DNA of 33,283 nucleotides, filler included, from Ministeria vibrans ATCC 50519 (lineage: Eukaryota > Protista > Filasterea), in the NCBI GenBank assembly GCA_943704425.1. It is 3 parts of 3 records of this genome, joined end to end, with 100 filler letters (N's around TTAATTAATTAA, not from the genome) between each part and the next. Parts side by side here need not be neighbours in the genome. Positions count along the whole stretch, not along the records: positions 7,081 to 11,446 come from CALSCP010001924.1; 2 more parts are not named here. The stretch is one strand, 5' to 3'. The position numbers and the translations under genes are program-made. The stretch's first letter is position 1. Every line of letters starts with the position of its first letter. Positions 7,081 through 11,446 of this stretch are shown one piece after another. The notes beneath the pieces are model-generated. The model saw nothing but the letters and a program-made list of their open reading frames with translations. It had not been told where the DNA came from and did no database searches.

Positions 7081-7189
<109 letters not shown>

Positions 7190-7207
7190 TCTGTCTGTTT
7201 TGCTTAG

Positions 7208-8795
7208 TACATTCTGCTGCACAGTCTGCCGTACAATGCGCTGCACCGTCGCATTTCGGTGTCCACCAAGAAAGTGGAGCCGCGTCATCGCGACGGCTGG
7301 GCCTTCAAGGAGATCGAGTTGGACATGCCATTTTTTGCGTACGACGAGAAGGAGCTCCAGCAGCACGGAGCCAATGTGTTTGTGTGGAAGAGCTTTGGCG
7401 ACACACACACGTCGACAGTGGTCATGTTGCACGAGAGCGAGCGTGCCGGTCGCTTTGTCGGTCGTGGCCAGACCGAGTGTGGTCTGCACACGCGCATCTC
7501 CTTTAGCGGCCTCGCCCACGGTGGTGTTCTCGTCGACCGTATGGTTGCCACCGACGAACTGGCGCACGTTGCCCAGTGCACACACACCCACGAGATGACG
7601 GCGCGTCAGACGTGCGACTTTGAGCTCATTGCCAACGGTGGCTTTTCGCCCCTTGTCGGCTTCATGACCGAGGAACAGTACAACTCCGTGCTCAACGACT
7701 GCCGTCTGCCCGAGCAAGAGCTCTTTGGGCTGGCCGTTACGCTCGACACCGACAACGACGCCATCCAGGTGGGCGACTACGTTCTCCTGACCAACAGCGA
7801 GACGGGCGCCCGCGGCGTCCTCCACGTCGAGAGCAAGTGGGCACCCGATCGCTTGCGTGAGGGCGAGCTCTGCTTTGGCACGACCAGCCTCGAACACCCC
7901 GCCGTCATGCATCTGGTCAAGGAGAAGGCGCGCTTCAACATTGGTGGACGCATCTTTGGGCGCGCCCTTCCCGAGCGTTCCTGGGTGACGTGCAAGACGC
8001 CGCGTCAAGTGCGCGCCACGCTCGACCAGTCCAAGCCCATCATTTTCTTCCAGACGAGAAATCCCACGCACCGTGCCCATGCCGCCATGTTCCTGCATGT
8101 TGCCAAGGAGTACCGTGGCGCCCAGGTCATTGTCAACCCCATCATTGGGCCGTCCAAGTCAGACGATGTGCCCGCCCAGGTGCGCGTTCAGACCTACGAG
8201 GCGCTCGCCAAGCGCCTCACTCACGTCAAGTTTATGTACCTCCCCTACAGCATGATGTAAGTGACAAGGTTTTTTTTTTTTGTTCGGGACGATACTGATG
8301 TTTTGCTTTGATTTCTTTCCTCATTTCAATAGGGTTGGCGGACCAAGAGAGTGTCTTCAACACATCATCATCCGCAAGAACTTTGGTGCCACCGGCATGA
8401 TTGTGGGGCGGGATCACGCAGGATGCAAGGATTTCTCGGGCAAGGACTTTTACGGGCCGTCCGATGCGCAGACGTTTGTGGCGCAGCACACAGACGAGCT
8501 CAAGATGGAGATGGTTCCGTTCAAGGCCATGGTCTACGCCGAAGAGATTGACGACTACGTCGAAGCCTCCGTCGCCAAGGAGCAAGGTTACACGCAGCGC
8601 AGCATCTCGGGCACCAAATTCCGCAAGGCACTGCGTGACGAAGAGGACATTCCCGACTGGTTCGCCTTCCCCGAAGTCATCGCCATCCTGCGCGACTGGG
8701 CGCGCGAGGAGAAGGCGCGCGAAGAGACAGCAAAGCTGTCGCTCAAGACAACAGAGGAGGAACAGGCGCCATCCGTTACCGTTGTGGCTGTCTAA
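7208..8795 (+). CDS. Fusion of (P)APS reductase C-terminal part (CysH/Met16/APR-B type) and ATP sulfurylase (Sat/Met3 type); 5' partial. Exons 7208-8256, 8333-8795
   Basis: One exon reads YILLHSLPYNALH...WKSFGDTHTS...ERAGRFVGRGQTECGLH (reductase motifs), then AHGGVLVDR, CDFELIANGGFSPLVGFMTEEQY, FQTRNPTHRAH. After a phase-2 GT-AG intron: GGPRECLQHIIIRKNFGATGMIVGRDHAG, ISGTKFR, IPDWFAFPEV (sulfurylase motifs). Confidence 0.93.
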
Positions 8796-9062
8796 GTCGT
8801 GTGTTGGCAAAAGTTGAATTGTGCGACGTTTTTGTCTGTCGCTTTGTGTGTGAAGTACATAACTGTGTGTGGATTTTTAACTTTGAATTATTTGGAATAA
8901 GGATTTTAAGAAGCTTCTATTATAATAATAATTATTATTATATTATTCTTTAGTGGGAGGACGTTCTTGCGCACTAAGATTCTTTCGAAACATTTCCATC
9001 TGCCCCAGTCGTTCGTTTATTCTTAATAATTTTAGGACTCATCCTTTTGAAGACTCTCAATT

Positions 9063-11446
9063 TCACACATAAGAGTCCGAAAAACCCGGGTTCAAAAAGT
9101 GGTCCTGCGGTGAAGTCTTAGAACCGTCTGGACAAGCGAGACGATCCCCCGTAGGTGCTTGAGTCTGGGGTCGAGGCATTGTCTCCAATTCCAGATCGCC
9201 TTTTTGCACTTTCCTTGATTTTGTTTGACGACAACGCCACACAACACCGAAGATGACACACACCATGACAAGAATGGCAACAATTCCGACGCTGACGCCA
9301 ATAACAACGCTGCTGGTGCTGGACCCAGTCGACAGCGCCAAGGAACCCTGGCAAAAGTCTCCAGAATAGCCAGCACTGCAGGTGCAATTGAATGCGGTAT
9401 CCCCTTTGGCTATGCATTGGCCGCCATTCAAGCAGGGGTACGACGTGCACCCGTTCTGCTGAAACACGGCAAAGGTGGTCGGACCCACGAAGTCAAAGAA
9501 GTCCTGCGCGCCCGCGTCGCGGCGACGATCACCAATTGTCACAGGCACACGCAGAGACCATGGGTCACTGCCTTGCGTAGTGTAAAGACCCGTACCTGGC
9601 AGCAACGCCGGTAGACCAAACGTTGACGTGTTGTTGAGATAAAAGTAGGGGCTCACGGCGGGTGAAGCAGGTGGACCCACATTGTTCTCGGGCAGGCCCA
9701 CCGAGTCGGGAAACAGGCCGTACTCGAACGCGACAGTCGTCGTCGTCACAATGGTCACGTTCTGACCCTGTCTAGTGGGTGAGTTTGAACTTGCAATGTG
9801 GATCGTCAATCCGGTTGACGAAGTCGGTTCAATGTCTTGGCTAACGTACGCCGCGCACAAGCGGCCACGATAGTTGGATTGTGGGGAGGGACAGATGCAC
9901 ACGAAGTAATCCACAGGAAGGAAGCGTGAGTAGTCTGGCGTCCGACAATCGCCATTGTGGCATGGATTCGTCGGCAGGCAAGGACTCGGTAAGTCGCAAA
10001 ACTCACCCACCCACTCGGTGGGGCAAGTGCACGTGCCTGTCGCCGAGTGGCATGTGGCGCCATTCATACAAGGCACTGACGTACATTGGTCGCATGTGTC
10101 GCGGAACGTGGGCAAGCCGTATGCGCATTCGCATTTGTAGGCGCCAAAGGAGCCAATGGTGTGACACGTTCCGCCGTGCTCACAGGGCGAGGAAAAACAT
10201 CCGTCGCTCATTGTGCAAGCGTCACCCCAGAAGCCCGCCGGGCAAACACAGCTGAACGAGCCAGTAGGAAATGCAGAGCGAATACAGGTGCCACCATTAG
10301 CACAAGGACTCGAATCACACGCCAAGTGTTGCACCTCACACAGCTCGCCGACAAACCCAGGAGCACAAACACACACAAATCCACCAAGAGAATTGGAGCA
10401 GAATCCGTTGTTGGCGCACGGGCTTGAGGCACACTCATCAATGTCTTCCTCGCACCATGTGCCTGTCCATGTAGCAGGGCACATGCAGCGAACCTGAGAT
10501 GACGCACCAGCAGAAACAGGAGGCAATTCCACACAGCTGCCGGCATTGTTGCACGGATTCGACACACATTTCGACATATAATAGTCACAAAAAACACCAG
10601 TGAAATGTGGATTGCAAACACACAAAAACGTTGACTGCAGATTGACACAAAGTCCGACAACGCATGGCGATGAAGAGCAATAATCGATCGCAGACTCACA
10701 GTTTGTTCCGACGAAGCCAGGAGCACAGGCACACGAGTACTCCAAAGGTTTGTCAATGCATGTCGCATAGTTCTGACACGGGCTCGACGCACACTCATCC
10801 GTCTCCGCTTCGCATGAGGTCCCGAAATATCCATGAACACAGGCGCACGCATACCCATTCACGCTGTCGCTGCACGTCCCACCGTTCACGCATGGGTTCG
10901 ACGCGCACTCGTCAACGTTCACTGCACAGGTCAAGCCAGTGAACCCAGCAGAGCAAGTACACGTGAACCCGCCGAAAACGTCAACACACACCCCGTCGTT
11001 CTGACACGGGTTTGACGCACACTCATCCGTCTCCGCTTCGCATGAGGTCCCGAAATATCCATGAACACAGGCGCACGCATACCCATTCACGCTGTCGCTG
11101 CACGTCCCACCGTTCACGCATGGGCTCGACGCGCATTCGTCAATGTTCACTGCGCAGGTCGTGCCAGTGAACCCAGCAGAGCAAGTACACGTGAACCCGC
11201 CGACAACGTCAACACACACCCCGTCGTTCTGACACGGGCTTGACGCACACTCATCCGTCTCCGCTTCGCATGAGGTCCCGAAGTATCCATGAACACAGGC
11301 GCACGCATACCCATTCACGCTGTCGCTGCACGTCCCACCGTTCGCGCATGGGTTCGACGCGCACTCGTCAATGTTCACAGCGCAGGTCGTGCCAGTGAAC
11401 CCAGCAGAGCAAGTACACGTGAACCCGCCGACAACGTCAACACACA
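9063..11446 (-). CDS. Single-pass membrane protein with at least 14 EGF-like repeats (many calcium-binding type); 5' partial
   Basis: Repeated D-E-C-x-S-x-P-C-x-N-x-G-x-C..C-x-C-xx-G-F/Y-x-G-xx-C units, a hydrophobic segment [24 protein letters not shown], and a short cytoplasmic tail ending [11 protein letters not shown]. The frame stays open up to the gap. Confidence 0.92.
10770..11446 (-). repeat. Near-identical 228-bp tandem repeat (two EGF domains per unit), about 3 copies visible
   Basis: Identical anchors recur at 10833, 11061 and 11289 (spacing 228). Confidence 0.93.

What the first reader, a model, noticed from the sequence alone, without database searches (positions are those of the whole stretch)
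7208..8795. (P)APS reductase fused in frame to ATP sulfurylase, with no APS kinase in view
Seen: inside a single exon (7208-8256) the reductase motifs LPYNALH, KSFGDTHTS (7388-7414) and ERAGRF..TECGLH (to 7489) run through an 8-aa linker (TRISFSGL) into AHGGVLVDR, the start of a Sat/Met3-type ATP sulfurylase. The protein ends shortly after the sulfurylase core with no kinase-like domain. Known: ECG(L/I)H holds the catalytic Cys of CysH/Met16/APR; animals fuse ATP sulfurylase to APS kinase (PAPSS) and fungal Met3 has a C-terminal kinase-like domain. As I recall, a reductase-sulfurylase fusion has been reported in a dinoflagellate, so the architecture is rare rather than unprecedented. Inference: one enzyme converting sulfate to APS to sulfite, possibly channelling APS and pulling the unfavourable sulfurylase reaction forward while skipping PAPS. 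This is unexpected if the host is an opisthokont, and may be laterally acquired.
Basis: partly seen in the sequence, partly recalled or inferred. Interest (0 to 1): 0.88.

Follow-up and report, generated by a model that had tools for sequence, protein, structure and literature searches.

The report
Known reductase–ATP sulfurylase fusion gene
This is a real, expressed gene that joins a sulfate-reducing enzyme domain to a sulfate-activating one, but the same fusion is already described in dinoflagellates and in single-celled relatives of animals, so it is an ordinary member of a known family whose chemistry has never been tested.

Summary
Exon 7208-8256 encodes the C-terminal lid of a sulfonucleotide reductase (RAGRF, ECGLH), an 8-residue linker, then a Met3-type ATP sulfurylase. 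Exon 8333-8795 completes the sulfurylase, with no APS-kinase domain. Spliced, polyadenylated transcript contigs from RNA-type runs of four studies (one on record as poly(A) RNA-seq) cover both exons. Three of them run 571-927 nt further upstream, in frame with more reductase sequence, so the fusion is transcribed as one mRNA.

The interpretation needs correcting. The architecture is not rare. About a hundred three-domain relatives turned up, in Capsaspora, Sphaeroforma, Creolimax, Corallochytrium, Syssomonas, Pigoraptor, Vitrella and many dinoflagellates. It was published in 2008 (Heterocapsa) and in 2014 (dinoflagellates, Chromera, Capsaspora). The window's protein sits inside the clade of unicellular holozoans, so nothing points to lateral acquisition by an opisthokont-type host.

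Both halves most resemble the fungal enzymes Met16 and Met3. Whether the reductase uses APS (channelling) or PAPS cannot be told from sequence. It lacks the Fe-S cysteines.

One detail I did not find described in the papers read: every fusion protein carries an ordered insertion of about 45 residues in the reductase domain, which the stand-alone reductases compared lack.

Verdict: new member of a known kind, low to moderate interest.

The parts
7081..7207 (+). 3' end of an intron: (TC)n microsatellite 7081-7187, a pyrimidine tract, and the AG acceptor at 7206-7207. The piece begins inside this intron, so the upstream exons are missing.
   Evidence: TRF, period 4, 26.8 copies; all four runs have contigs whose match starts exactly at 7208 and continues upstream on sequence unlike the window.
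7208..8256 (+). Coding exon of 349 full codons plus 2 bases of a split Met codon. It holds the end of the reductase domain, the linker, the PUA-like domain and the first part of the ATP-sulfurylase catalytic domain.
   Evidence: Collinear with full-length fusion proteins at 52-60% identity.
7247..7387 (+). Family-specific insertion of 47 residues (R14-W60) in the reductase domain, between VPYNxLH and (W)KSFGD.
   Evidence: Present in all aligned fusion proteins. Met16, C. auris PAPSR, APR-B and CysH have 4-6 residues here. Retained in transcripts. Ordered in the AlphaFold model of relative P0151, block pLDDT 91-98.
7388..7414 (+). KSFGDTHTS, the Fe-S-free version (GDxxxT/S) of the site where Fe-S APS reductases carry GCxPCT.
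   Evidence: Motif rule from Patron 2008. Invariant K-S-F-G-D in the family.
7442..7456 (+). RAGRF, the R(S/E/A)GR(W/F) substrate-binding motif of the reductase lid.
   Evidence: Motif definition in PMC8173546. R, G, R and F are invariant in the family.
7475..7489 (+). ECGLH, the catalytic motif. The nucleophilic Cys codon TGT is at 7478-7480.
   Evidence: Motif definition in PMC8173546.
7490..7513 (+). Eight-residue junction TRISFSGL between the reductase lid and the sulfurylase. Its first two residues (TR) are invariant across the family.
7514..7954 (+). PUA-like N-terminal domain of ATP sulfurylase (PF14306).
   Evidence: residues 103-249, E 1.9e-31.
7994..8256 (+). First part of the ATP-sulfurylase catalytic domain, including QTRNPTHRAH (8051-8080).
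   Evidence: PF01747, E 5.6e-18; TIGR00339, E 5.8e-52. Q, R, N, H and H match the residues conserved in over 100 diverse sulfurylases.
8257..8332 (+). Intron of 76 nt, GT..AG, T-rich.
   Evidence: the joint 8256>8333 appears in one contig of each of the four runs laid.
8333..8795 (+). Last coding exon: the rest of the ATP-sulfurylase domain (GRDHAG at 8406-8423), a 32-residue charged tail, and the TAA stop at 8793-8795. There is no APS-kinase-like domain.
   Evidence: (PF01747, E 1.1e-38, profile positions 97-211 of 212).
8796..8887 (+). 3' UTR, with the poly(A) tail added after 8887.
   Evidence: contigs of X11 and X7 end at 8887 followed by 22-23 A not present in the genome.

Best explanation
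The gene is an ortholog of the known sulfonucleotide-reductase/ATP-sulfurylase fusion proteins ('APR-ATPS') of unicellular holozoans and alveolates. One mRNA encodes a protein of roughly 670-700 residues. It has an N-terminal Fe-S-free reductase domain of the Met16/APR-B class, and only the last ~100 residues of that domain lie on this piece. The domain's catalytic lid (RAGRF...ECGLH) runs through an 8-residue junction straight into a Met3-type ATP sulfurylase that lacks any APS-kinase domain.

Shown here: the architecture, splicing, polyadenylation and transcription, and the conservation of the catalytic motifs of both halves.

Inferred: the sulfurylase half makes APS from sulfate and ATP. 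The Cys of ECGLH attacks the sulfonucleotide to form an enzyme S-sulfocysteine. A thiol reductant such as thioredoxin then releases sulfite, so the protein performs the first and the committing step of assimilatory sulfate reduction. I think it somewhat more likely than not (about 55%) that the reductase takes APS directly, as moss APR-B does. In that case the fusion would draw off the product of the thermodynamically unfavourable sulfurylase reaction. The family-specific ordered insertion and the tethered lid probably fix the two active sites relative to one another.
For: The domains and motifs are detected.

Transcript contigs from runs of four studies are spliced at 8256>8333. Two of them are polyadenylated at 8887, and three continue 571-927 nt upstream of 7208. 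Their last 30 nt read AKWSWKNVCD in frame, matching the family consensus LAxWSWxDVxxY.

Full-length collinear relatives at 52-60% identity carry PF01507+PF14306+PF01747. In the tree the window's sequence sits inside the holozoan clade.

K-S-F-G-D, E-R-x-G-R-F, T-E-C-G-x-H, QxRNPxHxxH and GRDHAG are all kept.

The AlphaFold model of the closest full-length relative has pLDDT 93 and pTM 0.86, with an ordered insertion and its lowest confidence (67) at the ECGIH segment. Its halves superpose on yeast Met3 (TM 0.89 normalised to the target) and yeast Met16 (0.74).

For APS as substrate: there is no kinase domain. The P-loop of relatives reads (S/T)AWLxxDN where fungal PAPS reductases have TTAFGLTG, and its Asp aligns with an Asp of APS-specific APR-B. 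Patron 2008 makes the same argument for Heterocapsa.
Against: The N-terminal ~170-195 residues of the reductase domain (P-loop, LDTG and KVEP motifs) are not on the piece, and I could not recover them. Their integrity in this organism rests on transcript length and 10 codons only.

By sequence the reductase half is nearer to PAPS reductases (Met16 E 1e-30, TIGR02057) than to APR-B (1e-24) or Fe-S APS reductases. No activity data exist for any member (Prioretti 2014). The P-loop argument is my own reading of the alignments, not a tested determinant.

The window's protein departs from two columns invariant in 92 relatives (P176A, H310N) and sits on a long branch.

All runs laid were assembled contigs, which cannot show a true 5' end.
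Confidence: 0.8

Rival explanations
1. Same fusion protein, but the reductase half is a true PAPS reductase like Met16. APS made by the sulfurylase half leaves the protein, is phosphorylated by a separate APS kinase, and returns as PAPS. The fusion then serves co-expression and stoichiometry, not channelling.
For: The reductase domains of relatives score best against PAPS-reductase models and structures (TIGR02057 1e-42 against TIGR02055 1e-21; Met16 1e-30 against APR-B 5e-24). The nearest stand-alone relatives found are fungal PAPS reductases at 32-35% identity. The Fe-S cysteines are absent.
Against: Moss APR-B shows that an Fe-S-free, PAPR-like enzyme can be APS-specific (PMC11350084). The P-loop differs from fungal PAPS reductases and shares an Asp with APR-B. 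A fusion of steps 1 and 3 of a pathway that omits step 2 would be odd. No kinase domain was seen in the fusion relatives examined.
Confidence: 0.35
2. The reductase part is a non-catalytic remnant or regulatory module, as the APS-kinase-like domain is in fungal Met3, and only the sulfurylase is active.
For: Only the tail is visible here. It carries a 47-residue insertion, and NCBIfam scores stay far below the curated cut-offs.
Against: The lid motifs are invariant or nearly so across 92 relatives spanning holozoans and alveolates: KSFGD and the R, G, R, F of RxGRF are invariant, and TECGIH is kept in at least 90%, with a conservative Leu in the window. The core motifs in relatives are kept as well. 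The insertion is ordered and conserved rather than decayed.
Confidence: 0.05
3. The gene was acquired laterally by this host, for example from an alveolate.
For: The family's distribution is patchy (holozoans plus alveolates), and Prioretti 2014 calls the similarity hard to explain. I could not establish the host lineage independently.
Against: The sequence groups with Syssomonas inside a clade of 13 rows whose eight named members are all unicellular holozoans (SH-aLRT 99), not with Vitrella or the dinoflagellates. Both halves are fungal-like, that is opisthokont-like. The gene has spliceosomal introns and sits beside a eukaryotic EGF-repeat gene.
Confidence: 0.1
4. Assembly or annotation artefact: two separate genes wrongly joined.
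For: None found. The piece is short and begins in a microsatellite.
Against: The junction lies inside one uninterrupted exon. It is covered by identical transcript contigs in four studies and is conserved residue by residue in about 100 proteins.
Confidence: 0.01

Closest known systems
APR-ATPS fusion proteins of dinoflagellates (Heterocapsa triquetra, Amphidinium), Chromera/Vitrella and the filasterean Capsaspora owczarzaki ('ATP sulfurylase Ats1'): Patron et al. 2008 (PMC2275785), Prioretti et al. 2014 (PMC4220642)
   Same: Same domain order (Fe-S-free reductase, short junction, PUA-like domain, ATP-sulfurylase domain, no kinase). Same conserved junction ...TECG(I/L)HTR...PHGG. Same insertion in the reductase domain. 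52-60% identity to holozoan members and 41-44% to alveolate members.
   Different: A different organism, not named to me. A longer branch, with two departures from otherwise invariant columns (P176A, H310N). A 32-residue charged C-terminal tail. The N-terminus is not on the piece.
Yeast Met16 / fungal PAPS reductase (PDB 2OQ2)
   Same: Best solved match of the reductase half. Shares the GDxHS/T, ERAGR(W/F) and TECG(I/L)H lid and has no Fe-S cysteines.
   Different: Met16 is a stand-alone protein whose lid ends the chain, and it has 4 residues where the fusion has ~47. The P-loop is TTAFGLTG against (S/T)AWLxxDN in fusion relatives. Met16 uses PAPS.
APR-B of Physcomitrium patens (PDB 4BWV), an Fe-S-free APS reductase
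   Same: PAPR-like sequence without the cluster cysteines. Proven APS specificity, the precedent for the function proposed. A P-loop Asp aligned with the family's Asp.
   Different: More distant than Met16 (E 5e-24 against 1e-30). Lacks the insertion, is not fused to a sulfurylase, and has extra residues before ECGIH.
Fungal Met3 ATP sulfurylase (PDB 1G8F, 1J70, 1R6X, 1I2D)
   Same: Best match of the sulfurylase half (E 1e-80, 38% identity, TM 0.89 to the kinase-less form). Same QxRNPxHxxH and GRD motifs.
   Different: Met3 carries a C-terminal APS-kinase-like regulatory domain and no N-terminal reductase.
Animal PAPS synthase (APS kinase-ATP sulfurylase)
   Same: Also a fusion of ATP sulfurylase with the next enzyme to use APS.
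   Different: The partner is a kinase at the N-terminus, and the sulfurylase belongs to a different subtype (E 1e-22). It makes PAPS for sulfation, not sulfite.

Membership tests
Reductase-ATP sulfurylase fusion family (APR-ATPS) | Sulfonucleotide-reductase domain N-terminal to ATP sulfurylase in one reading frame | tested here: met
   The junction lies inside the uninterrupted exon 7208-8256. The reductase tail and the sulfurylase domains are both detected.
Reductase-ATP sulfurylase fusion family (APR-ATPS) | Complete reductase domain upstream on the same mRNA | tested here: inconclusive
   Transcript contigs extend 571-927 nt upstream, and the 10 codons seen are in frame and homologous.
Reductase-ATP sulfurylase fusion family (APR-ATPS) | Collinear similarity and phylogenetic placement among known members | tested here: met
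   52-60% identity over all 349 residues to 13 full-length members. Placed inside the holozoan clade, SH-aLRT 99.
Reductase-ATP sulfurylase fusion family (APR-ATPS) | Family-specific ~45-residue insertion between VPYNxLH and WKSFGD | tested here: met
   7247-7387. Present in all members aligned and absent from the solved reductases shown (Met16, C. auris, APR-B, two CysH) and from the fungal stand-alone reductases.
Sulfonucleotide reductase (CysH/Met16/APR, PF01507) | Lid motifs R(S/E/A)GR(W/F) and ECG(L/I)H with the catalytic Cys | tested here: met
   RAGRF at 7442-7456 and ECGLH at 7475-7489. Motif definitions from PMC8173546.
Sulfonucleotide reductase (CysH/Met16/APR, PF01507) | Rossmann-like core with P-loop and KVEP motif | not testable with these tools
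   It lies in exons off the piece. It is present in all full-length relatives.
Fe-S APS reductase (bacterial/plant APR) | CC...CXXC cluster ligands | tested here: not met
   The CXXC site reads SFGDTHTS (7391-7414). Relatives have FDxHSK in place of CCxxRK. TIGR02055 gives only E 0.04.
ATP sulfurylase, Sat/Met3 type (PF14306 + PF01747, TIGR00339) | PUA-like domain plus catalytic domain with QxRNPxHxxH and GRD(H/M)AG | tested here: met
   QTRNPTHRAH at 8051-8080 and GRDHAG at 8406-8423.
Fungal Met3 / Aquifex Sat-CysC | C-terminal APS-kinase or kinase-like domain | tested here: not met
   Only 32 residues follow the sulfurylase domain before the stop, with no kinase hit. Transcripts are unspliced from 8333 to the poly(A) site.
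Animal-type PAPS synthase | N-terminal APS kinase and a PAPSS-type sulfurylase | tested here: not met
   The N-terminal neighbour is a reductase. The closest relative matches Met3 at 1e-80 against PAPSS at 1e-22.

The most novel reading that the evidence does not exclude
The fusion family is a separate origin of cluster-free APS reduction. In this reading a Met16-type PAPS reductase of an early opisthokont was converted to APS use by P-loop changes. It became rigidly docked to a Met3-type sulfurylase through a new ~45-residue subdomain and a lid that is now an inter-domain tether, giving true APS channelling. The gene later passed between holozoans and alveolates.
Probability: 0.3. Interest if true: 0.5.

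Novelty: new member of a known kind. Interest (0 to 1): 0.25.

Why it matters
It matters little as a discovery, because the architecture has been in the literature since 2008 and in an animal relative since 2014. It is useful in three modest ways.

First, it adds an expressed member to a family that turns out to be widespread among unicellular holozoans. That bears on how sulfate assimilation was organised before animals lost it.

Second, no member has ever been assayed. The APS-versus-PAPS question and the channelling idea are open, and a simple recombinant experiment could test them.

Third, the reductase's catalytic lid normally ends the protein as a mobile tail that must be reached by thioredoxin. 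Here it is an internal tether next to a conserved new subdomain, which is a neat structural problem.

Tried and rejected
1. A hidden intron at 7259-7390 would remove the 'insertion' and restore Met16-like spacing. Rejected: all transcript contigs are continuous there, and the insertion is conserved in every relative.

2. Recovering the upstream exons. The scan of metagenome contigs found only relatives at or below 49% identity. The reads tool shows only 30 loose letters. The full N-terminus stays unseen.

3. Looking for the fusion in prokaryotes. The 11 loci hit by the TECGIHTR/KSFGD patterns matched only the reductase tail of the query. The two I read (L005, L010) are stand-alone Fe-S APS reductases next to sulfite-reductase genes. 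Only reductase-tail patterns were scanned, so this is not an exhaustive test.

4. Looking for stand-alone reductases that carry the insertion. The four short candidates I aligned (P0267, P0268, P0272, P0274) are truncated fusion models. Two run into ...HTR..PHGG.LVD, and two stop before or at ECG.

5. Naming the host from the neighbouring EGF-repeat gene. Only one EGF-driven hit came back.

6. Literature on P-loop determinants of APS/PAPS choice. The APR-B structure paper was not held, and the papers that were held do not state determinants.

8. Exon 1 and exon 2 were always handled separately by reference.
Full report
**What is on the piece**

The usable stretch is 7081-11446. It opens with a (TC)n microsatellite at 7081-7187, followed by a pyrimidine tract that ends in AG at 7206-7207. 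From 7208 an open frame runs to 8256. A T-rich 76-nt GT..AG intron follows at 8257-8332. A second exon from 8333 ends at a TAA stop at 8793-8795. On the other strand, from 9063 to the end of the piece, lies an unrelated gene for a membrane protein made of EGF repeats.

**Checking the observation**

- KSFGDTHTS is at 7388-7414.
- ERAGRF...TECGLH ends at 7489, and the Cys codon is at 7478-7480.
- TRISFSGL is at 7490-7513, followed by AHGGVLVDR.

These are not chance look-alikes.
- NCBIfam aligns residues 47-94 of the exon to the very end of its PAPS-reductase models (PRK02090 E 4.7e-9; TIGR02057 E 9e-9, model positions 190-224 of 224).
- The PDB sequence search aligns residues 59-99 to residues 213-253 of yeast Met16 (2OQ2).
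- RAGRF and ECGLH are the two motifs that define the mobile C-terminal lid of sulfonucleotide reductases, R(S/E/A)GR(W/F) and ECG(L/I)H (PMC8173546).
- Downstream, Pfam finds the PUA-like domain (E 2e-31) and the ATP-sulfurylase domain, split over the two exons (E 6e-18 and 1e-38).
- QTRNPTHRAH and GRDHAG are intact.
- Only 32 charged residues follow the sulfurylase domain, and there is no kinase hit.

The Pfam PAPS_reduct model gives nothing on 7208-7489. That is expected, because only the tail of the domain is on the piece.

**Transcription**

Near-identical sequence occurs in runs of ten studies, two of them on record as RNA libraries. I laid four runs. One (X6) is a poly(A) RNA-seq library; the other three are guessed to be RNA. 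All were available only as assembled contigs.
- Each has a contig that skips exactly 8257-8332.
- Two contigs end in a poly(A) tail after 8887, where the genome is not A-rich.
- All start their match exactly at 7208.
- Three contigs continue upstream for 571, 854 and 927 nt on sequence absent from the piece.
- Their last 30 upstream letters read, in frame, AKWSWKNVCD before YILLHSLPYNALH. This fits the family consensus LAxWSWxDVxxY(V)L...VPYNALH.

So the reductase part continues in upstream exons of the same mRNA. Contigs cannot show the true 5' end.

**What it is**

A profile-free search of 1.8 billion representatives with exon 1 returned full-length proteins of 645-764 residues that align to all 349 residues. 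Searching with the best of them gave about a hundred proteins with the precomputed architecture PF01507 + PF14306 + PF01747. Named members include:
- Capsaspora owczarzaki ('ATP sulfurylase Ats1'), Sphaeroforma arctica and Creolimax;
- Corallochytrium, Syssomonas (Colp12) and Pigoraptor (Opistho-2);
- Chromosphaera (Nk52) and Abeoforma;
- the chromerid Vitrella and many dinoflagellates (Polarella, Symbiodinium, Alexandrium, Gambierdiscus).

Exon 1 is 52-60% identical to the holozoan proteins and 41-44% to the alveolate ones. In a maximum-likelihood tree it is sister to Syssomonas. Both sit inside a 13-row clade whose named members are all unicellular holozoans (SH-aLRT 99). That clade is separate from the Vitrella group and from the dinoflagellates (quick search, exon 1 only).

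The junction ...TECG(I/L)HTR-x5-6-(P/A)HGG is conserved throughout the family, so the fusion is old.

**Literature**

Patron et al. 2008 reported ATPS fused to APR in Heterocapsa triquetra and argued for channelling of APS. Prioretti et al. 2014 list the same N-terminal-APR architecture in dinoflagellates, Chromera velia and the filasterean Capsaspora. They state that no activity or kinetic data exist, and they call the filasterean-alveolate similarity hard to explain. A 2024 review still cites only the 2008 observation.

So the architecture is known, including in an opisthokont. I could not name the host. The neighbouring EGF-repeat gene gave no informative relatives, and organism names were coded.

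**Kinship of the two halves**

For the closest full-length relative (P0151), the sulfurylase half matches the fungal enzymes far better than other subtypes:
- yeast and Penicillium Met3 at E 1e-79 to 1e-81;
- plant ATP sulfurylase at 1e-23;
- human PAPSS at 1e-22.

The reductase half matches, in order:
- Met16 at 1e-30;
- Candida auris PAPS reductase at 7e-29;
- moss APR-B at 5e-24;
- E. coli CysH at 1e-10 to 1e-12;
- the Fe-S APS reductase of P. aeruginosa at 3e-9.

An AlphaFold model of P0151 built on 92 family members has pLDDT 93 and pTM 0.86. Foldseek gives the same order of matches. The nearest stand-alone reductases found in the protein collection are fungal PAPS reductases at 32-35% identity. 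Both halves are therefore 'fungal-like', which fits an opisthokont origin of the fusion better than import into one.

**A feature I did not find described in the papers I read**

Between VPYNxLH and (W)KSFGD, every fusion protein has 44-50 extra residues. In the window this is 7247-7387. Met16, the C. auris enzyme, APR-B and CysH have 4-6 residues there, and the fungal stand-alone enzymes lack the stretch altogether. The four short reductase-only candidates I aligned turned out to be truncated fusion models.

In the model this stretch is ordered (block pLDDT 91-98, three short strands and a helix). The least confident block is the one that contains ECGIH (67). I had considered that 7259-7390 might be an unnoticed in-frame intron. 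The transcripts keep it.

**How it most likely works**

Established for the family: the lid Cys attacks the sulfur of APS or PAPS to give an enzyme S-sulfocysteine, and thioredoxin or a similar reductant then releases sulfite.

Inferred here: the sulfurylase half makes APS and the reductase half consumes it. In this protein the lid is no longer a free tail. It is the tether to the sulfurylase's PUA-like domain, and the new subdomain may hold the two halves together.

Whether the substrate is APS or PAPS is undecided.
- For APS: no kinase domain was seen in the fusion relatives examined. Cluster-free APR-B is a precedent. In relatives the P-loop reads (S/T)AWLxxDN, unlike fungal TTAFGLTG, and its Asp aligns with an Asp of APR-B. 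This is my own reading of the alignments, and the P-loop of this very gene is off the piece.
- For PAPS: overall similarity is highest to PAPS reductases.

I put APS at about 55%.

**Oddities of this copy**

Of 94 columns in exon 1 that are at least 95% conserved in 92 relatives, the window differs at 10. Two of these columns are invariant in the relatives: P176A and H310N (positions recounted). Among 108 more distant sulfurylases the His position is Q or N in 14, so H310N is probably tolerated. Pro176 is nearly universal (139 of 140).

The transcript contigs show no differences at these places, so they are not sequencing errors. The terminal branch is long (0.64 against 0.22 for Syssomonas).

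**Limits**
- The N-terminal exons were not recovered.
- The prokaryote scan used only reductase-tail patterns.
- The tree was a quick search on one exon.

**Verdict**

This is a real, expressed reductase-sulfurylase fusion and an ordinary ortholog of a published family. The claims of novelty and of lateral transfer do not hold, and the biochemistry remains untested.

Noticed in passing
window 9063-11446, minus strand: Tail-to-tail neighbour: an ORF of more than 771 residues that runs off the piece. It has at least 13 EGF/hEGF/EGF_CA repeats, a non-EGF Ser/Thr-rich stretch, one predicted transmembrane stretch ([23 protein letters not shown]) and a short cytoplasmic tail. Apart from one EGF-driven hit, no relatives were found for the non-EGF part.
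   Followed up: partly
window 10770-11446: Three tandem copies of a 228-nt unit (96% identical) inside the EGF-repeat gene, each encoding two EGF modules. This is recent repeat expansion and a likely cause of the assembly break at the end of the piece.
   Followed up: no
window 7081-7187: A (TC)n microsatellite of about 107 nt fills the 3' part of the intron upstream of 7208 and coincides with the start of the piece. The assembly probably broke here, which would truncate any gene model made from this contig.
   Followed up: no
window 7733-7735 and 8135-8137: This copy has Ala176 and Asn310 where 92 fusion relatives invariantly have Pro and His. The transcript contigs agree with the genome at both places.
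   Followed up: partly
window 8768: A G>C difference in the transcript contig of run X11 only. [quoted passage not shown]
   Followed up: no
P0163 (Vitrella) and P0002, C-terminal ~90-100 residues: The Vitrella-group fusion proteins carry an extra conserved C-terminal extension (...THxLFF...SL(D/E)(D/E)L...LQ) that is absent from the holozoan and dinoflagellate members. Its function is unknown.
   Followed up: no
L005 and L010 (alphaproteobacterial MAG contigs): Stand-alone Fe-S APS reductases ending in KTECGIHTR lie next to a sulfite-reductase hemoprotein gene. In L010 a DUF-like small ORF sits between the two. This is the ordinary bacterial cys gene arrangement.
   Followed up: no
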